From Mantamonas sphyraenae STR306 (taxonomy: Eukaryota > Protista > CRuMs): a stretch of DNA of 64,000 bases. Positions 1,260 through 9,066 of this stretch are shown here, one piece after another. The translations under genes and the position numbers were made by a program. Positions within the stretch are counted from its first letter, which is position 1; each line of letters opens with the position of its first letter. A model generated the notes under the pieces. That model saw only the letters and a program-made list of their open reading frames with translations, ran no database searches and was not told the DNA's origin. The stretch spans positions 240,456 through 304,455 of the forward strand of contig JAPMXV010000017.1 in NCBI GenBank assembly GCA_026936335.1. Reading direction: 5' to 3'.

Positions 1260-3561
1260 TCACATGCTGAATTGCCTGTCGTCGTCTTGACGCTTGCCGT
1301 AGGGGTTAGAGGCAGAGAATCGGCCAGCTTGCTTGTGGTACTTTTGCTCGCCTGCTCCGCTGCTGCTTGACCCACCACGACGGCGGGACTTTGTGGCGCC
1401 AGTGATGTTCAAGTTGACCTTGGGGGGCACGGTGAACCCGAAGCTCTTGGCCACCTTGAGGAGATCGAGGGCCTGCACGTCAAAGATGTTTTTGTGCGAG
1501 TGGCTCGCGTAGGCCTGGAGGTAGGAGCGGTAGCCATCGCGGGCGCTCTTGTGAAGGTAGTAGTTCTTTGCAATGAGCTTCTCCAACTGCGACTGCACGT
1601 TTGCAATCTTCTTCTTGGGAAAGTCGTACTCGTTGAGGTTGGCCTTGGCCTGGCGCAGGTAGCGCAGGAAACCCAGCTCGGATGGGAGAAGGAAGAGCAA
1701 CGCCTTGCCCGATGCACCTGCACGTGCTGTACGTCCCACACGGTGAATGTACTCCTTGGGGTCGTCGGGCGGGTCAAACTGAATGATCCAGTCGACGAGC
1801 GGGATGTCCAACCCACGCGCGGCAACGTCGGTGCACAAAAGAATGCCCTTTTCGGCGTTGCAAAACTCGAAAAAGGTGTTTGTGCGCTTCTGCTGCTTGT
1901 GCTTGCCGTGCAGCTCGAGGCAGGGGACGTCGATGTAGTTCAACAGCTCGGCGTGGAACTTGACCGAGTTGCGCGATGACATAAAAACAATGATCTTGCG
2001 GTGTGGGTTCTTCTTGAGAAAGGTAAACAGGAGGAGGAAGCGAGCGTCTGACTCGCAGACGACGTAGCCCTGCTCCAGCGTGTCCACGGTGGCGTTTTCG
2101 CGGTCGTCGTGCACACCCACATACTTGGGCGAGCGCTTGAGACTGAGCTTGGCCAGATCCTGCACGTTGCGCGTCTGGGTGGCGCTGAACAGCATGGTCT
2201 GCCTGTTTTCAGGCAGCAACTTGATGATCTGTGTCATTTCCTCCTCAAAGCCAATCTCCAGGCATCGGTCGGCTTCATCAATGACCAGTGCCTGCAGGTT
2301 CTTGACCAAAAAGCCGCGTGTGTTCTGCAGGTGGTCCAGCAGGCGACCCGGAGTGGCCACAAGCAGGTTGACGCCCTTGAGCAGCTTCTGTTCCTCAGAT
2401 CGGCGGTTGGCTCCGCCCATGACAATGCCAAACGTCTGCGAATGGTACTGCATGAGCACACTTGCCTCTGCGTAGATCTGAAGCGCCAACTCGCGTGTGG
2501 GCGAGATGACAATGACGCCTGTGCCGTTGCGCGGCTTGAATTGCGTCTTGTGCAGGAGCTCGATGGCCGGGATGAGGAACGACATGGTCTTGCCGCTGCC
2601 TGTGCGTGCTGCAGCGAGGATATCGTAGCCTGCCAGCCCCAACGGGATGCTCTTGGCCTGGATTTCTGTCATTTCGGTGAAGCCCTTGTCGGCGATGCCC
2701 TTTCGCGTCGCCTCACTCAGTTCCAGGGACTCAAATGCGGTGTCGTACTCTATGGAATGACAACGTAGGCGGGGTGGTGGGGCGATTCCGTGTGTGAATG
2801 TGTGTCATGAACAGGCGGTGTGCGTGTGTGTGTGTGTGTGTCAGCTACGGGGCGACGAGCGGAGAAAGAACGACGGCCGGGTCCGGTGTCCGGCCAACGG
2901 ATTTTCCTCGGCTGGCCCTTTGCATGCATGCAGGAGCCACACGCAGGGTTCCATGGAAGCATGTGGTCGCGGGGACGTGCATGTGCCCACTGGCTGGTTG
3001 CGTCCGAGGGTGTGTGTACGAGGACGGGCTCGGCCAGGGACAACTTCCGCATTCGCACCTGGAAAACTCACCCTGGACGTCCTCCTCCTCGGCCTTGAGC
3101 TGCTTTGCGGCAGAAGCTCCCTTGCTCTTGGTCTTCTTGCTGGATGAGGACGACGATTTGTTGGTGTCGTCTTCGTCATCGCTGCTGCTGCTGCTGCTGC
3201 TCTTGCTGCTGCTCTTTTTGTGCTTGCGTCGCTTCTTCGACGAGGCGGATTCGTCAGCCTGTTCCTCCCAGCTAATCGACTGCTCCCCAGCATCCGAGTC
3301 GTCGTCGTCTTCATCCTCGTCCACTTGCTTGCCCCTCTTGGCCTCCTTGCGCTCGTCCTGCTCGCTGCGTGCCTCTTCCATGCTCTGGCGGTCCCGCTTC
3401 TTCTGCTTCTTCTTCTTGCTGCTGCTCTTCTTGGCCGATTTCGTCTCTGAACGCGTCGTCTCCTCCTCCTCAGCCTCCACAACCACCTCTTGCTCCTCCT
3501 CCTCGACGTCTTTGGACGACGTACGCTTCTTGCGGCTGCGCTTCTTGTCGCTCTTGGCCAT
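1260..3561 (-). CDS. HAS1: DEAD-box RNA helicase HAS1/DDX18 (60S biogenesis)
   Basis: Exons 3561-3072 (K/E/S-rich, MAKSDKK) and 2749-1260; intron 2750-3071 (GTGAGT..CATAG) joins in frame ([11 protein letters not shown]). Motifs [32 protein letters not shown] and the HAS1-type FKPRNGTG. Confidence 0.96.
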
Positions 3562-3621
3562 GGTTGGGGTTTTTGGTGGCAGCGCAGGCGTCGCCAAACT
3601 CTCGTGCACATCAACCCCGCC

Positions 3622-6600
3622 ATGACCGAGCCGCTGGGGGAAACTACGTCCAGTGAGGATGTCGACAGCTGGGATCTCATGCCAGAAGATTCGGTGAAGC
3701 TGATGTCCAGCGCAAAGCTGAACGTGTGGAGTGAAAGCCAAGGAGCCTTGCTGGGGGCTTCCACCAACGACGACGACGACGACGACAGGCAGAACAAGGA
3801 GGACGGAGAAGAAGAGGAAGAAGAGGAAGAGGACGACGATTCGGACGACGACGGCTTCATGGTGCGGCGACGCGTGCCGAAGCGGAAGAACCCGCACGAT
3901 GTTGGGCACGTGTTTGTGATGCTGGGCGATTTGCAAACGCTGGCTTGCGACGCGTGGCTGTTCCCCACCGACGCCACATTCAACTTTAGCTATGCGTGGT
4001 CATGGGTAGGTGGCCAAGGAAGGGGCGTGTGCACACCGGTGAACGATAAAAAGGGCCACAACAAGCTGTGGAAGGCTGACCCACCACCCAAAAACACACA
4101 AACACACAGCCCTACGACACCGTGAACGTACCGACGCGCAAGTCGTACCCGGAGTGGGGATACAGCAAACACGTGCTCCGCATCGACACTTGGTTCCCGG
4201 ACAAGGTGAACCCGTACATGGTAAACACAAACGTGCCTCTGGATGAGATGCTGCAGCACGTGGCCGACTTTCTGGACGTGGTGGCGTCCGATCTGAAGGA
4301 CAAGGAACCTGCGTACCGCAGACACAAGCACTTGGTGGGCATGCCTGTGGTGGGTACAGGGTACGGAGGCCATCAGGAATGGTCTGGCTCGGTGCTGCAG
4401 CAATTGTTTCCCGTCCTCTACGCCAAGAGCGAGGAGCACAACATGGACGTTGTCCTGGTTGCGTACGAGCGTGAAATGTTCTCTGCTGCCCAGGTTGCTC
4501 GCAAGCAGGCGTCGTTCCGCAGCCAACAGTGGCAGGTGCTGGACGAAAAGGCTCAGGATCTTGCGCAGCGAATGGCCAACCATGCCCTGGACGAGTCTCT
4601 TGTGCTGTTTGTGGGCGCCGGTGTGTCCATGGGTGCCGGTCTGCCATCATGGTGGGGGCTGCTGCACAAGCTGGCCAAGCAGGCCGGATTCACGGACAAA
4701 GAGTGTGAGGCGTTCTGGCCACCCATGTCGCCGCTGGACTGTGCACGCATTGTCGAGACACGGTTGGGTCAGAGTCTGGGTCCTTTGATTGCCAAGGAGT
4801 TGCGTGTGCCTCTGTGCTCGCCGCAGCATCTGATGCTTGCCTCGTTGCCCGTGCGTGAGGTGATCACCACCAACTACGACGAGTGCTTTGAGCGTGCCTC
4901 GCGCAACGCACGTGTGTCCACCGTCGTCCTTCCCTACGAGCCTGAAATGGACGTCGACCGCTGGGTGCTCAAGATGCACGGATGCGTCAACCACCCGGAG
5001 GACATTGTGCTGACGCGCTCGCACTACATCCGCTACGCCCAGCGCCGCGGCGCCTTGGCCGGCATTGCCCAGGCCCTGCTCATCACCAAGCACATGCTCT
5101 TTGCCGGCTTCTCTCTCAACGACGACAACTTTCTCAAGATCATCGACACGGTGAAGCAGGCAAAGGGCGACCTGGCCGTTGCTGACGCCAGTGCAGGTCA
5201 AGGAAGCAAAGCGAACGAGGGGGAGGAAGAAGCAGGCAGCAGCAGCAGCAGCAGCAGCACGGTGCCCAGGGTCAAGTTTGAATTGCCTGAAGGAGTGGTG
5301 GACAGCTCGGAGGACGACGACAGCTACGGCAACGTGTTTGGCTCGACGGTGACACTGGACAACGATCCTGTGTTTGAAAACCTGTGGCAAAACGACCTGC
5401 ACATTGTTTGCACGCAGGAGCAGGGTGGACCTTTCTCGCTGGGCATTTGGCGCTTGGAAATCTTTTACGATCTGCTCAACTCGCACATTTACAGCCACAG
5501 CACGCAGTACGTGCTGGACCCGCGGTACGACGCCATGTTGAGCTCGGGTGAGGAACGCATTGTGGGCAGCATCCACAAGTTTGTACGTTGTGTGGAGAAG
5601 CAGTTTCCGGAGGCTGTGAACAGCAGCCAATGGCCGCTGGTGGTCAACTTTCTGTACGAACTGGGCGGAGAGACCCTGTTGAAGTTCCTGCCACTTCCCA
5701 AGGGTCAAGTTGCACAGCAGACGCGTCGCATGTCGTCTGTACCCTCGCTGCTGGAAAGCGTGAGCACGACCGACTCTTGCGATGCGGGGGACATCATCCA
5801 GCACAAGGCAGGCAGTGGCACAGTGTTCCTGGTGCAGTCGGACATCCGAGTGATGAGCGCAGACGCAACGTTGATCCCATTCAGCGAGAACCAAGTGTGC
5901 ATGGCGTTCTTCCATGCGGAGAGCCGACTTGCGGAACTGATTGCAGAAGGCAAGGGTGAGGTGGCGGCGGATTCCTTGAAGGACGGAACGGTTCAACTGG
6001 AAGAGAGTACGCCAGGGCAGCTGCATCGCCTGTTTAAGCATTGTCACGAGGACAAGACGGCCATTGTCTACGCGGTGGACATTGGGAGCGAGTTTGCAGG
6101 AGTGGAGTTTCTGGCGTCGTGTGCAAACACGTTCCTGGCCCAGGTGCACGCAGACGTGGTAGAGCACGAGTTGGTGCCTCACAACGGACGAGCACGCCAT
6201 TTGGTGACGTTGCCAATCATTGGGACGGGCTGGGGCGAAGGCGCAAACCACACCGGGGCTGTGCTTGCTGCACTGCTGCCGGAGCTGTACACAGGGGCAC
6301 AGCAGTATGGTCTGGATGTGGTGTTGGTCACCAACGACCCAAACGCATACTTGGCAGCGCAGATGCAGCGCAACGCCATGGTGGAGAACCCGTGGCCAGA
6401 CCTGACCATGTCGCAGCGAGCGGAGGGGCGTCGGTTGGCTAAACTGGCAGCCAAGGGCCATTTGGCAGCCATGGTGGGAGCCGGAGTGGCAGCAGACGCA
6501 GGCATTGCGTCGTGGCGTGTGTTTCTGTGCGACTTTGCGGTGGAGCATGGCTTGGACGAATCGTATGTGCACAACCTGCTTGAACGCTTCGACGTGCTGG

Positions 6601-7529
6601 ACACAGCCAGGCTGGTTGCTCAGAGGTGTGGAGGACGCGAGGCACTTGCGGCTGCGCTTGTGGAACGTGTGCAGCAGGCACGGCGGTTTACGATGAAACA
6701 CGCCCTGCTGGCGTCGCTGCCCATCGACCAGTGGATCAGCACCAACTATGACGATCTGTTGCAAAAGGCATGTGCAGCAGCACACAGGGACATTGCTGTG
6801 CTGTTGCGCGAACCCGTGCACAGCACGCGTTGGCTGTTGAACATGTACGGCAGCGTGAGCGCGCCCGAGAGCCTCATCCTGCGTTCGCGCGACGACATCG
6901 AGGCGTCGAACCACCAGGGAATGGCACTATCGGGTGTGTTGCAGACACAGCTGATCACGAAGCATCTTTTGTGTGTGGGCTTTGGTCTGGACAACGACAA
7001 GTTCTTTTCGCTGGCGTATGCCGTGCGCCAGGCAATCAGCGACGCTCGGGAGAACTTTGGCACGGCACTGACGACGTTTGAGGACCAGCTGTTGGAGGAT
7101 GTGTGGGCAGGCAGCCTGCATCTGGTGCCCATGGTGTACACGGACGACCACCAGGTGCCACAGGACGAGGAAGAGCGCGACACGCCAGGCAAGATGCACA
7201 GCGGCTCCAAGTCGGTGGCACATGCTGCACGTGTCATGGATATCTTCCTGGACTGCCTGGCTCAGCAGACGCTGATGGAGCAGGGCGATCGCTCGTTCTT
7301 GCTGGACGACTGGTTCGAGTCGCTGCTTAGCCCAGAGGACAAACAGCTCAAGAAGGCACTTCTGGTGCTCAAGCACGACCTCCCCGACACGGGTGTCACT
7401 GTGCCAGTCATCAAAAACGTCGAGCGGCTGCTCAAGATGTTTGGCGACGTGGCCAAGTCGCGCTTCCGATACCGCAAAAAGGCAGGGCGCAAGATGAGCG
7501 AGTTGTCATTCAGTGAAATGGCGTTCTGA
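3622..7529 (+). CDS. Tandem [Macro-like domain + SIR2-like (SIR2_2) NADase] x2 protein, about 1267 aa
   Basis: Exons 3622-4005 and 4110-7529; intron 4006-4109 (GTAGGT..GCTGAC..CACAG). Macro-like GHVFVMLGDLQTLACDAWLFPTD...MPVVGTGYGG. SIR2-like FVGAGVSMGAGLPSW...ITTNYD...LKMHG. Second unit FLVQSDIRVMSADA...LPIIGTGWG, then VGAGVAADAGIASW...ISTNYD...LNMYG. Confidence 0.85.
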
Positions 7530-7701: not shown

Positions 7702-8781
7702 ATGTCGTCTGCCAAGGCTATTGTCAAGACTTTCCACGAGACCAACACACACACGGGCTCGCACGTCGTGTCGTGCGCAGCCACCAAGGAGGCTGCCATC
7801 GTTGATGCCGTGCTGGTGTACGCCAGCAACAGCGGACGCACAAGGTAGGTACAGGGAACAAGGGGGGAGGTGTGCTGCACACAGGACACAGGACACGGCA
7901 AACACAAGGCGTTGAGCGTGCACGTGAGGTGTGCACGTACCTGGACACAGCTGGACGTGTGTCTGGAGCGTGTCCGGAGAACGGCTGGAGGGTTCTGACG
8001 GAATTTTGCCGAAACTGACGCGCTGTTCCTTGCCGTCCACAGCAACGACATGATCGACGAGATTGTGGCGTATGTGAAGGAAGAGAACCTGGATGTGAAG
8101 TACCTGATCGATTCGCACGTGCATGCCGACCACCTGACGGCTCTGGCAGTGCTGAAGGAGCACTTTCCCGAAGCCAAGACGGTGTGCAACCACAACATCA
8201 CGCAGGTGCAGGACACGTTCAAACCCATCTTCAATCTGGGCGACGAAGTGCCCGCCGACGGTTCCCAGTTTGACGTGCTGGTCAAGGAGGGCGACGTGGT
8301 GAAGCTGGGCGAGCTGGACGGCCTGCACGTGATGGAGACGCCGGGCCACACGCCGGCATGCACCACCTACTACATTGACGGCGACTGTGCCTTTGTGGGT
8401 GACACCATCTTTATGCCGGACATGGGCACGGCACGCTGCGACTTTCCGGGAGGAAGCGCAGACACGCTGTGGGAGAGTGTGCAGCGCATCCTGGCGCTCA
8501 AGGACGAGACGCGTCTGTTTGTGGGCCACGACTACGCTCCGGGAGACCGAGAGACGTTTGAGTTTGAGAGCACAGTGGCCGATGAGAAGGCCAGCAACAA
8601 GCACGTGAAGGAGGGCACGACCAAGGAGGAGTTTCTGGAGTTTCGCACCACACGCGACCTGCAACTGTCCCACCCTGGACTCATCCTGCCTTCCCTGCAG
8701 GTCAACATCCGTGGTGGTGAGCTGCCCGAGCCCGAGAGCAACGGCACACGCTACCTGAAGATCCCGCTCAACACGATCTGA
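7702..8781 (+). CDS. Metallo-beta-lactamase-fold hydrolase, persulfide dioxygenase/Blh (ETHE1-related, bacterial type)
   Basis: Exons 7702-7844 and 8043-8781; intron 7845-8042 (GTAGGT..ACTGAC..CACAG). Motifs SHVHADH, TPGHTPAC, FVGDTIFMPD, ARCDFPGG, GHDY and C-terminal YLKIPLN. Confidence 0.88.

Positions 8782-8812: not shown

Positions 8813-8857
<45 letters not shown>
8813..8857. repeat. (AC)n microsatellite
   Basis: About 22 perfect AC units between convergent genes. Confidence 0.95.
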
Positions 8858-8862
<5 letters not shown>

Positions 8863-9066
8863 CCCTCTCTTCCATTCCATTCCATGTCATGCCACGCCTC
8901 GCTCAAACCACTCGCTCCCGCACTGCCTCGAGCTGCAGCTGAAGGAAGCGCAGACGACGGCTGTCGATCAGGGCATCGTGCAAACTCTGGCCGATGGCAT
9001 CGGCGGCAGTCTTGAGCCTGCTGCCCTGCAGCTGTTGTTCAGAGCACCGTCGTGTCCACGCACTCG

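What the first reader, a model, noticed from the sequence alone, without database searches (positions are those of the whole stretch)
3622..7529. Eukaryotic [Macro-SIR2]x2 protein with one active and one pseudo-NADase unit: candidate NAD-depleting immune system
Seen: the protein is a duplicated two-domain module. Each unit has a Macro-like domain (G/S-D-L/I...DA...P, then P-V/I-V/I-GTG.G) followed by a SIR2-like domain lacking the zinc-binding Cys pairs of sirtuin deacetylases. Unit 1 has TTNYD (about 4866) and KMHG (about 4971). Unit 2 keeps STNYD but has NMYG (about 6840), a His-to-Tyr change. The gene carries a spliceosomal intron, so it is a real nuclear gene. Established: GAG.S / TxNYD / HG SIR2 domains are the NADase effectors of bacterial anti-phage systems (Thoeris ThsA, DSR, SIR2-pAgo, Sir2-HerA) and are related to animal FAM118. 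The Asn and His are catalytic, and these effectors are activated by oligomerisation. Macro domains bind ADP-ribose derivatives and act as the signal sensor in type II Thoeris. Inference: a sensor-effector in which the Macro domains detect an ADPR-like signal and the dead SIR2 copy works as a built-in scaffold or inhibitor, causing NAD collapse on infection. I recall single Macro-SIR2 units in bacteria, but not this intramolecular active/pseudo pair in a eukaryote.
Basis: partly seen in the sequence, partly recalled or inferred. Interest (0 to 1): 0.88.

Follow-up and report, generated by a model that had tools for sequence, protein, structure and literature searches.

The report
Tandem Macro-SIR2 NADase with dead copy
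A protist nuclear gene encodes two back-to-back copies of an ADP-ribose-sensor (Macro) plus NAD-destroying (SIR2) module. Only the first copy keeps its catalytic residues. The family is already catalogued as a bacterial-type immune relic in eukaryotes, but the conserved live/dead pairing has not been described.

Summary
The gene has exon 1 at 3622-4005, a 104-nt GT-AG intron, and exon 2 at 4110-7529. It encodes a 1,267-aa [Macro-SIR2_2]x2 protein.

- **Catalytic motifs.** Unit 1 keeps GAG/TTNYD/KMHG. Unit 2 keeps GAG/STNYD but reads NMYG (His to Tyr).
- **Macro fold.** The N-terminal domains are true Macro folds (AF2 pLDDT 82; Z 15.9 to solved macrodomains).
- **SIR2 type.** The SIR2 domains are ThsA-like.
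- **Organism.** Assembly statistics match Mantamonas sphyraenae.

Eukaryotic Macro+SIR2 ("SIRim clade C", 83 species) was described by Bonhomme et al. 2024. Their table lists the Mantamonas plastica orthologue and a tandem Thecamonas protein.

What the searchable literature does not describe:
- About 11 eukaryotic representatives share the tandem layout. All keep unit 1 active, and all have lost the unit-2 His.
- The unit-2 Macro stays intact, while the unit-1 Macro decays in some lineages.
- The two SIR2 halves are predicted to pack as a pseudo-twofold dimer (ipSAE 0.68 against 0.15 for the best control).

Single-unit forms are common in bacteria and have no fixed partner gene. The genome has no TIR domain but has six PARP hits.

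An immune NAD-depletion role is inferred, not shown. I rate this a new variant of a known kind, of moderate interest.

The parts
3622..4005 (+). Exon 1 (128 aa). It holds an acidic low-complexity N-terminus, then the first ~40 residues of Macro domain 1 (GHVF...GDL...CDAWLFPTD), from about 3886.
   Evidence: ORF and translation. Residues 89-128 match Macro profile positions 5-39, E 4e-13.
4006..4109 (+). Spliceosomal intron, 104 nt, GTAGGT...CACAG, phase 0. It splits Macro domain 1.
   Evidence: Sequence. The two exons cover complementary profile ranges. The M. plastica orthologue is continuous across the junction. There is no RNA read evidence.
4110..7529 (+). Exon 2 (1,139 aa plus stop). It holds the rest of unit 1 and all of unit 2.
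4116..4550 (+). Macro domain 1, C-terminal part, including the PVVGTGYGG loop at about 4329.
   Evidence: Profile positions 55-192, E 1.2e-34. Motif coordinates.
4530..5669 (+). SIR2_2 domain 1, ThsA-like and predicted active. GAG is at 4608-4634, TTNYD at 4866-4880 (Asn, exon-2 residue 255) and KMHG at 4971-4982 (His, exon-2 residue 290). A Ser/Glu-rich insert lies at about 5172-5309. The C-terminal helical part contributes to the predicted interface.
   Evidence: Pfam PF13289. PDB ThsA 6lhx E 4.4e-17 and 7uxt E 1.1e-17. PADLOC ThsA1 5e-55. Motifs. Interface.
5799..6413 (+). Macro domain 2 (complete). Its motifs are SDI...DATLIP and LPIIGTGWGEG.
   Evidence: AF2 model pLDDT 82. Foldseek top hits are all macrodomains. 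VIA-align Z 15.9 to 5fud and 15.8 to PARP9 macro 2. The family profile matches macroH2A 7ny6 at E 1.2e-6.
6393..7442 (+). SIR2_2 domain 2, a pseudo-enzyme. GAG is at 6471-6497 and STNYD at 6738-6752 (Asn kept). NMYG at 6840-6851 carries Tyr in place of the catalytic His. The C-terminal helical part lies in the predicted interface.
   Evidence: 55.5 bits to PF13289. H290 aligns with Y913. The His is lost in unit 2 of every tandem homologue.

Best explanation
This is a real, single-copy nuclear gene. The organism is most likely Mantamonas sphyraenae (CRuMs), judged from assembly statistics. The product is a tandem [Macro-SIR2_2]x2 protein of the eukaryotic 'SIRim clade C' family, whose SIR2 is of the bacterial ThsA type.

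Shown here:
- Unit 1 keeps the full NAD+-glycohydrolase site (GAG, Asn, His).
- Unit 2 is a conserved pseudo-SIR2 with His replaced by Tyr. From my own knowledge, this is the same change used to make catalytically dead sirtuin mutants.
- Both N-terminal domains have the Macro fold and are of a macroH2A-like, probably non-hydrolytic, binder type.

Inferred:
- One old internal duplication turned a homodimer-forming single-unit enzyme, the common bacterial form, into a hard-wired pseudo-heterodimer.
- The SIR2 halves of units 1 and 2 pack against each other through the same surfaces.
- Labour is divided. Unit 1 catalyses. Unit 2 mainly supplies a ligand-binding Macro domain and a structural partner.
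- Binding of an ADP-ribose-containing ligand to the Macro domain(s) gates NAD+ hydrolysis, possibly with higher-order assembly as in ThsA or FAM118.
- The biological role is most likely a stress or infection-triggered NAD+-depletion switch. It is not driven by TIR in this organism. Possible ligand sources are PARP products or the enzyme's own ADPR product.
For: Gene model.

SIR2 identity and catalytic residues.

Macro fold: plus the profile match to macroH2A.

Family size and architecture: 1,163 profile hits. Most are single ~520-aa Macro-SIR2 proteins, and about 11 are tandem.

Unit 1 against unit 2: every tandem member has unit 1 with TTNYD/K[ML]HG and unit 2 without the His.

Macro conservation: the unit-2 Macro is strongly kept (E 1e-34 to 1e-53). 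The unit-1 Macro is degenerate in P0008, P0009, P0029 and P0060.

Phylogeny: unit-1 and unit-2 SIR2s form parallel, congruent groups, and unit-2 branches are 2-3 times longer. Monophyly of each set is not rejected (AU p 0.55 and 0.61).

Eukaryotic origin of tandem members: Thecamonas, Amorphochlora, and contigs carrying eukaryote-type genes.

Predicted unit1-unit2 binding: ipSAE 0.68 against a best control of 0.15. That mark was reached by 51 of 78 solved complexes and 2 of 108 mismatched pairs. The runs agree in at least 76% of contacts, and partner pLDDT is at least 78. The interface is pseudo-twofold: 18 of 23 alignable unit-1 interface residues map onto unit-2 interface residues.

Literature: clade C is SIRim+Macro and branches with ThsA-like bacterial proteins. 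FAM118A and FAM118B need each other for NADase activity.

Genome context: the genome has PARP domains but no TIR.
Against: - There are no biochemical or expression data for this protein, and no RNA run was listed.
- Pfam Macro models do not hit any of 71 family members at E<=0.01, and the first glycine-rich phosphate loop typical of hydrolytic macrodomains is not evident. Ligand binding is therefore unproven.
- The complex prediction may score from memory of solved SIR2 oligomers or from paralogy. It was run on two cut chains, not on the intact spliced protein.
- Bacterial homologues have no conserved partner or defence-island signature in 64 loci, so an immune role is not established even in bacteria.
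- Grouping of the unit-2 sequences could partly reflect long-branch attraction.
Confidence: 0.55

Rival explanations
1. It is a housekeeping or regulatory NAD/ADP-ribose enzyme rather than an immune effector. In this reading the SIR2 transfers ADP-ribose to a substrate, or makes an ADPR derivative, and the Macro domains read or reverse that mark. This would resemble macrodomain-linked sirtuins (SirTM/Mfs1).
For: Macro-sirtuin linkage is known for SirTM. The fungal Mfs1 macrodomain matches structurally at Z 13.1, and the FAM118 paper describes SirTM. The gene is single-copy and kept across distant protists. Many bacterial homologues sit among ordinary metabolic genes such as SDR and P450.
Against: By sequence the SIR2 is ThsA/DSR2/KomC-like. 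No SirTM or canonical sirtuin chain appears among the PDB hits. PADLOC's best hit is ThsA1. The Macro is closest to the non-hydrolytic macroH2A type. The eukaryotic distribution is patchy, which is typical of conflict genes.
Confidence: 0.2
2. The whole protein is non-catalytic. It would act as an NAD+/ADPR-binding sensor or scaffold, with unit 1 keeping its motifs only for ligand binding.
For: Unit 2 shows that the fold tolerates loss of catalysis. Individual FAM118 proteins have very weak activity on their own.
Against: GAG/TTNYD/K[ML]HG is strictly kept in unit 1 of every tandem member, while unit 2 drifts. That pattern points to selection for catalysis in unit 1.
Confidence: 0.1
3. Unit 2 in this species is still an active or partly active NADase, because it keeps GAG and Asn and changes only His to Tyr. 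The protein would then have two working sites.
For: The window's unit 2 is the least degenerate of all unit-2 copies.
Against: The His is essential in ThsA-type enzymes. PDB entries include His mutants used as dead controls, such as DSR2 H171A and KomC H146N. All other lineages have lost the His, and often the Asn and GAG as well.
Confidence: 0.05
4. The feature is a gene-model artefact. Units 1 and 2, or exons 1 and 2, would be separate genes, or the locus would be a bacterial contaminant.
For: There is no RNA evidence from this genome.
Against: Units 1 and 2 lie in one uninterrupted 1,139-codon frame. The exons carry complementary halves of one domain. The M. plastica protein spans the junction. 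The same tandem layout is annotated in Thecamonas and Amorphochlora. The GC content matches the surrounding sequence.
Confidence: 0.02

Closest known systems
Eukaryotic SIRim clade C (Bonhomme et al., bioRxiv 10.1101/2024.09.18.613514)
   Same: [quoted passage not shown] Their Table S4 lists the M. plastica orthologue and the tandem Thecamonas protein as clade C.
   Different: [quoted passage not shown] The words tandem and pseudo do not occur. The duplicated active/dead layout and its conservation are not described there, and no clade C protein has been tested experimentally.
Type I Thoeris effector ThsA (SIR2-SLOG), e.g. B. cereus 6lhx / 8bto
   Same: It is the closest solved SIR2 by sequence (E 4e-17) and shares the GAG, TNYD and HG motifs. 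It is a ligand-gated NADase that works as an oligomer or filament.
   Different: The sensor here is an N-terminal Macro domain, not a C-terminal SLOG. There is no TIR partner in the genome. The protein is an internal tandem with one dead site.
Type II Thoeris effector (Macro + transmembrane), EcThsA 8v6q
   Same: A Macro domain acts as sensor of an ADPR-derived signal (literature). Structural similarity is Z 9.8.
   Different: The effector here is SIR2, not a membrane pore. Other macrodomains (PARP9, PARP14, O. iheyensis) match better. Pfam Macro models, including ThsA_Macro, give no hit.
Vertebrate FAM118A/FAM118B (SIRim clade A)
   Same: They are eukaryotic SIR2_2 NADases of bacterial defence ancestry. 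Two paralogous SIR2 proteins must interact for strong activity, which is functionally analogous to the unit1/unit2 pair.
   Different: They belong to a separate clade and acquisition, have no Macro domain, are two separate polypeptides, and both keep their catalytic residues.
Macrodomain-linked sirtuins (SirTM; fungal Mfs1, 8rsn)
   Same: Macro and sirtuin are fused in one protein. The macro fold matches at Z 13.1.
   Different: SirTM is a different sirtuin subfamily that ADP-ribosylates proteins. The SIR2 here is of the SIR2_2/ThsA type.
Bacterial single-unit Macro-SIR2 proteins (~520 aa; Myxococcota, Planctomycetota, Actinomycetota and others)
   Same: They have the same Macro + SIR2 + C-terminal helical unit, are 30-50% identical, and keep Asn and His in 95 of the 101 copies where both positions could be aligned.
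   Different: They are single units. They are uncharacterised, and PADLOC 2023 has no model covering their Macro part. They have no universal neighbouring gene.

Membership tests
SIR2_2 / SIRim (Pfam PF13289) | Match to the family model above the curated cut-off | tested here: met
   The whole protein scores 145.9 bits against a cut-off of 24.5. Unit 1 scores 96.8 bits and unit 2 scores 55.5 bits.
SIR2_2 / SIRim (Pfam PF13289) | Catalytic Asn (TNYD) and His (HG) plus the GAG NAD-binding loop | tested here: met
   Unit 1 has GAGVSMG, TTNYD and KMHG. Unit 2 fails at the His (NMYG), so only one of the two domains meets this feature.
SIR2_2 / SIRim (Pfam PF13289) | Absence of the zinc-binding Cys tetrad of canonical sirtuins | tested here: met
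   The exon-2 protein contains no CxxC motif.
Eukaryotic SIRim clade C (Bonhomme et al. 2024) | [quoted passage not shown] | tested here: met
   Macro fold by AF2, Foldseek and VIA-align, next to SIR2_2. The gene has an intron and a eukaryotic genomic setting.
Eukaryotic SIRim clade C (Bonhomme et al. 2024) | Placement in the authors' clade C in their tree | tested here: inconclusive
   The M. plastica orthologue and Thecamonas P0005 are labelled clade C in Table S4.
Macro domain superfamily | Macro fold: mixed beta-sheet flanked by helices, with the GD...DA strand pair and the G-x-G loop | tested here: met
   Z 15.9 (rmsd 3.3 A, 168 residues aligned) to 5fud. 40 chains score Z>=8, and nearly all of them are macrodomains or macro-like aminopeptidase N-domains. 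TM is up to 0.66 by query and 0.75 by target.
Macro domain superfamily | Match to the Pfam Macro models (PF01661, PF20016) | tested here: not met
   None of 71 family members hits any Macro model at E<=0.01. The family profile reaches only macroH2A, at E 1.2e-6, in the PDB sequence search.
Macro domain superfamily | Binding of ADP-ribose or a derivative | not testable with these tools
   This needs ITC, a thermal-shift assay or a co-structure.
Type I Thoeris (ThsA SIR2-SLOG + ThsB TIR) | SLOG sensor domain and an associated TIR protein | tested here: not met
   The PDB and PADLOC alignments to ThsA cover only the SIR2 part. The genome has no TIR_2 or TIR match.
Type II Thoeris (Macro-TM effector + TIR) | Macro sensor joined to a membrane effector, with an adjacent TIR | tested here: not met
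   The effector is SIR2. The genome has no TIR. The Macro matches EcThsA only at Z 9.8.
SirTM (macrodomain-linked sirtuins) | Sirtuin of the SirTM subfamily | tested here: not met
   All PDB sequence hits are ThsA, DSR2, KomC or SIR2_2-type proteins. None is a SirTM.

The most novel reading that the evidence does not exclude
The tandem clade would be an ancient, eukaryote-specific, TIR-independent NAD+-depletion switch. One duplication fixed a former homodimer as an intramolecular heterodimer, and complementary decay followed: catalysis was kept only in SIR2-1, and sensing mainly in Macro-2. The switch would be triggered by PARP-derived ADP-ribose, self-produced ADP-ribose or virus-derived ADP-ribose species. 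This would be a built-in active/pseudo-enzyme immune effector found across several eukaryotic supergroups (CRuMs, Apusomonadida, Rhizaria).
Probability: 0.3. Interest if true: 0.7.

Novelty: new variant of a known kind. Interest (0 to 1): 0.5.

Why it matters
SIR2_2 NADases are a main example of immune modules shared between bacteria and eukaryotes. So far only the vertebrate FAM118 branch has been studied experimentally. Clade C (Macro+SIR2) is the branch closest to Thoeris ThsA and is untested.

The tandem form offers a natural experiment. It has one live site and one dead site, and two Macro sensors with unequal conservation. It could show how ligand sensing, dimerisation and catalysis are coupled in this enzyme class. 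It could also show how such a switch works in an organism with no TIR signal generator.

It also adds a clear case of pseudo-enzyme evolution by internal duplication that has been kept across deep eukaryotic lineages. The basic family is already catalogued, however, so the finding refines known work rather than opening a new category.

Tried and rejected
- **RNA evidence.** The look-up of sequencing runs listed no run, so read laying was not used and the intron rests on indirect evidence.
- **Joined exons.** The spliced full-length protein was never searched or folded. Macro domain 1 was analysed as two pieces, and the fold test was done on Macro domain 2 only.
- **Pfam.** The whole protein and 71 Macro-domain homologues gave no Macro family hit.
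- **First AF2 model.** The model built from 4 sequences was poor (pLDDT 57). It was replaced by a 71-sequence model.
- **The search for homologous proteins.** This word-indexed search found only 2 true relatives. The exhaustive profile search was needed.
- **The search for related loci.** The Macro-only alignment failed because it had no conserved stretch. The search was repeated with full-length single-unit proteins.
- **Bacterial partner gene.** No neighbour family occurs in more than 10 of 64 loci. The recurrent ones are lineage synteny (SDR, P450, DUF1206) or a Polyangium-specific kinase-AAA_16 and patatin pair. Small upstream ORFs have no Pfam or PADLOC hit. I did not scan the bacterial flanks directly for TIR domains.
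- **AU test.** The test on the 78-row mixture-model tree did not finish in two 300-s runs. A 39-row LG+G4 version was used instead.
- **Literature.** Phrases such as 'Macro-SIR2' returned nothing. No later paper on clade C was found.
- **Atlas feature search.** It gave only sub-threshold leads (0.89) to ThsA_Macro and Macro clusters.
- **Contamination or HGT-remnant idea.** Rejected because of the intron, matching GC content, the M. plastica orthologue and the eukaryotic homologues.
Full report
**1. What is in the sequence**

On the + strand an ATG at 3622 opens a 128-codon exon that ends at 4005. A 104-nt segment follows (4006-4109, GTAGGT...CACAG). A second frame then runs without a stop from 4110 to the stop codon at 7527-7529, giving 1,139 codons. 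Both frames are closed by stops inside the 104-nt segment, so neither can be read through.

The intron model has two independent supports:
- Exon 1 residues 89-128 match positions 5-39 of a profile built from 71 homologous N-terminal domains. Exon 2 residues 3-147 match positions 55-192 of the same profile. The two exons therefore carry the two halves of one domain, in order.
- The Mantamonas plastica orthologue, printed in a published supplementary table, is continuous across this point with the same spacing. It has 26 residues between the conserved AW.W and WFPD landmarks, against 27 here.

No RNA run was listed for this genome, so there is no direct read evidence. The full spliced protein (1,267 aa by arithmetic) was neither searched nor folded, and Macro domain 1 was handled as two pieces.

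**2.

- Pfam SIR2_2 matches twice (E 1.1e-42). Both copies exceed the curated cut-off in the six-frame genome search, at 96.8 and 55.5 bits.
- TTNYD starts at 4866, KMHG at 4971, STNYD at 6738 and NMYG at 6840.
- The two units align at 34% identity over 307 residues (E 6e-43). The catalytic His of unit 1 pairs with Tyr in unit 2, and the Asn pairs with Asn.
- There is no CxxC motif, so the sirtuin zinc site is absent.
- The closest solved proteins are Thoeris ThsA (7uxt E 1.1e-17; 6lhx E 4.4e-17), followed by DSR2 and KomC. The best PADLOC model is ThsA1 (5e-55).

**3. The N-terminal domains are Macro domains**

Pfam does not say so: there is no Macro hit for this protein or for any of 71 homologues. 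The evidence comes from structure prediction and a profile search.

- An AlphaFold2 model of the complete unit-2 domain (window 5787-6404) built on 4 sequences was poor (pLDDT 57). It already drew macrodomains as its top matches.
- With 71 sequences the model reached pLDDT 82 and pTM 0.81.
- Foldseek returned 134 PDB matches at E<=0.001. The listed matches are almost all macrodomains or proteins built on them, including TTHA0132, PARP9, PARP14, macroH2A, viral nsP3 and O. iheyensis.
- An independent all-against-representatives search gave Z 15.9 (5fud) and 15.8 (PARP9 macro 2). It gave Z 13.1 to the macrodomain of the fungal SirTM fusion Mfs1 and Z 9.8 to the type II Thoeris Macro effector EcThsA.
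- The ESM Atlas structure search puts a bacterial 541-aa 'SIR2 family protein' first and Macro families next.
- At sequence level, the family profile reaches the Capsaspora macroH2A macrodomain at E 1.2e-6.

The family keeps the GD(L/I)...DA.L.P strand pair and the LP(V/I)(V/I)GTG.GG loop. I could not recognise the first glycine-rich loop of hydrolytic macrodomains. Together with the macroH2A affinity, this suggests a binder rather than a hydrolase. That last step is an inference.

**4. Which organism**

The tool reports the window's assembly as 25,061,354 bases in 78 contigs, and local GC is about 59%. The Mantamonas sphyraenae genome paper gives 25.06 Mb, 78 primary contigs and 59.19% GC (PMC10492846). 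The M. plastica clade C protein is visibly the closest relative of unit 1. I therefore take the genome to be M. sphyraenae (CRuMs). This is an inference from statistics, not from a label.

**5. The family**

A profile of the Macro domain, searched against 1.84 billion representatives, found 1,163 proteins at E<=0.001.

Single-unit form:
- Among the best 150 hits, about 120 are single Macro-SIR2 proteins of roughly 520 aa.
- A scan of one genome per prokaryotic species found at least 454 such loci in Myxococcota, Planctomycetota, Actinomycetota, Rokubacteria and others.
- A eukaryotic single-unit form with an N-terminal B-box exists in Capsaspora.

Tandem form:
- About 11 representatives are tandem.
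- They include Thecamonas trahens XP_013761649.1 and Amorphochlora amoebiformis GAB5356659.1.
- The rest are metagenomic or SRA contigs whose neighbours are eukaryote-type genes, such as DENN, UBA, Pkinase, U3, WH1-PBD, RhoGAP, XPA and Alg6.
- No bacterial tandem was seen.

**6. The live/dead pairing is the rule, not a quirk of this gene**

- In every tandem protein, unit 1 reads G(A/S)G / TTNYD / K(M/L)HG. In every unit 2 the His is gone, replaced by Y, N, A, F, Q or P. The Asn and the GAG loop are often gone as well.
- The Mantamonas copy is the least decayed unit 2. It keeps GAG and Asn, and only the His has become Tyr.
- The Macro domains show the reverse trend. Macro-2 is well kept in all of them (E 1e-34 to 1e-53). 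Macro-1 is degenerate in four lineages, where the GTG.GG loop is lost in P0008, P0009 and P0029 and only a fragment remains in P0060.
- In a SIR2 tree, unit-1 and unit-2 sequences form parallel groups with the same internal pairs: P0002 with P0005, P0001 with P0007 and P0006, and P0029 with P0060. Unit-2 branches are two to three times longer.
- Trees constrained to hold all unit-2 sequences, or all unit-1 sequences, together are not rejected (AU p 0.61 and 0.55). Long-branch attraction could contribute to this result.

The simplest reading is one old duplication followed by complementary decay.

**7. Do the two halves touch?**

I ran one complex prediction: the unit-1 SIR2 plus its C-terminal helices (exon-2 residues 141-545) against the whole of unit 2 (residues 560-1139).

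- The score was ipSAE 0.68, against 0.15 for the best of three controls.
- That mark was reached by 51 of 78 solved complexes and by 2 of 108 mismatched pairs.
- The runs agree in at least 76% of contacts, and partner pLDDT is at least 78.
- Both chains contribute equivalent elements to the interface. Of the 23 unit-1 interface residues that can be aligned to unit 2, 18 map onto unit-2 interface residues and all 23 fall within two positions of one.
- The C-terminal helices (463-518 against 1060-1111) form the core of the interface.

This is the picture expected if a homodimer became an intramolecular pseudo-dimer. The caveats are real: solved SIR2 oligomers exist, the two units are paralogues, and the model may score from likeness. 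This is support, not proof.

**8. What might trigger it**

- The genome has no TIR_2 or TIR match in six frames, so a Thoeris-type TIR signal is unlikely here.
- It has six PARP-domain matches and several ordinary Macro proteins.
- The gene is the only SIR2_2, and the only carrier of this Macro type, in the genome.
- In bacteria no neighbour is shared by more than 10 of 64 loci.
- In Polyangium the gene is preceded at -3 nt by a 1,318-aa Ser/Thr-kinase-AAA_16 protein and followed at +28 nt by a patatin-like protein. That arrangement looks like a conflict module.
- In Geodermatophilaceae the neighbours are ordinary metabolic genes.
- PADLOC 2023 covers only the SIR2 part of the bacterial proteins.

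The ligand, the trigger and an immune role therefore all remain inferred.

**9. Comparison with what is known**

- Bonhomme et al. (bioRxiv 10.1101/2024.09.18.613514) define five eukaryotic SIRim clades. They state that clade C (83 species, branching with ThsA-like proteins) 'typically' fuses SIRim to a Macro domain, mirroring type II Thoeris.
- Their Table S4 labels the M. plastica orthologue and the tandem Thecamonas protein as clade C.
- The FAM118 paper also marks Macro-bearing SIR2_2 proteins in its tree legend.
- The words 'tandem' and 'pseudo' do not occur in the Bonhomme text. Phrase searches found no description of the duplicated architecture, and I found no later work on clade C. I could not see their figure 4c.
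- The nearest functional analogy is FAM118A/FAM118B, two paralogous SIR2 proteins that must interact for strong NADase activity. Here the partnership would be built into one chain, with one partner dead.

**10. Verdict**

The domain calls and the active/pseudo asymmetry are right. The immune, ADPR-sensing and NAD-collapse parts are untested, and the novelty was overstated.
- The gene is a member of a catalogued family.
- The new elements are the conserved tandem with one dead site, the complementary decay of the Macro and SIR2 domains, the predicted pseudo-dimer, and the absence of TIR.
- I rate it a new variant of a known kind, with interest about 0.5.

Noticed in passing
window 2845-3562 (- strand): A Lys/Glu-rich ORF on the minus strand starts at an ATG at 3562, only about 60 bp from the Macro-SIR2 ATG at 3622. 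The two genes are head to head with a very short shared upstream region.
   Followed up: no
L017:4042-11888 (also L018, L019, L071; Polyangium spp.): The bacterial single-unit Macro-SIR2 gene is preceded at -3 nt by a 1,318-aa Ser/Thr-kinase + AAA_16 (STAND-like) protein. It is followed at +28 nt by a 754-aa patatin-like phospholipase. This may be a three-gene conflict module.
   Followed up: partly
L012:1506-9567 and L013 (soil metagenome contigs): A single-unit Macro-SIR2 gene sits beside NERD, ADP-ribosylglycohydrolase and WYL-domain genes. A 179-aa upstream ORF overlaps its start and has no Pfam or PADLOC hit.
   Followed up: partly
P0015 (Capsaspora owczarzaki XP_004365796.1): This is a eukaryotic single-unit member with a long N-terminal extension; its source (UniRef) names it a B box-type domain-containing protein. 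It shows that clade C also recruits eukaryote-type domains.
   Followed up: no
window 8050-8781 (+): A metallo-beta-lactamase-fold ORF lies directly downstream. Earlier scan notes call it a bacterial-type persulfide dioxygenase. I found no sign of a functional link to the Macro-SIR2 gene.
   Followed up: no
window ~2800-2860 and ~8830-8880; intron 4078-4109: GT/CA dinucleotide microsatellites flank the locus, visible as runs of CVCV in the translations. The 3' end of the intron is CA-rich rather than pyrimidine-rich.
   Followed up: no
window 3760-3900: The N-terminus has an Asp/Glu-rich tract followed by a short basic cluster (RRRVPKRK). M. plastica shares the acidic tract (a poly-Asp run) but not the basic cluster. 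The function of this region is unknown.
   Followed up: no
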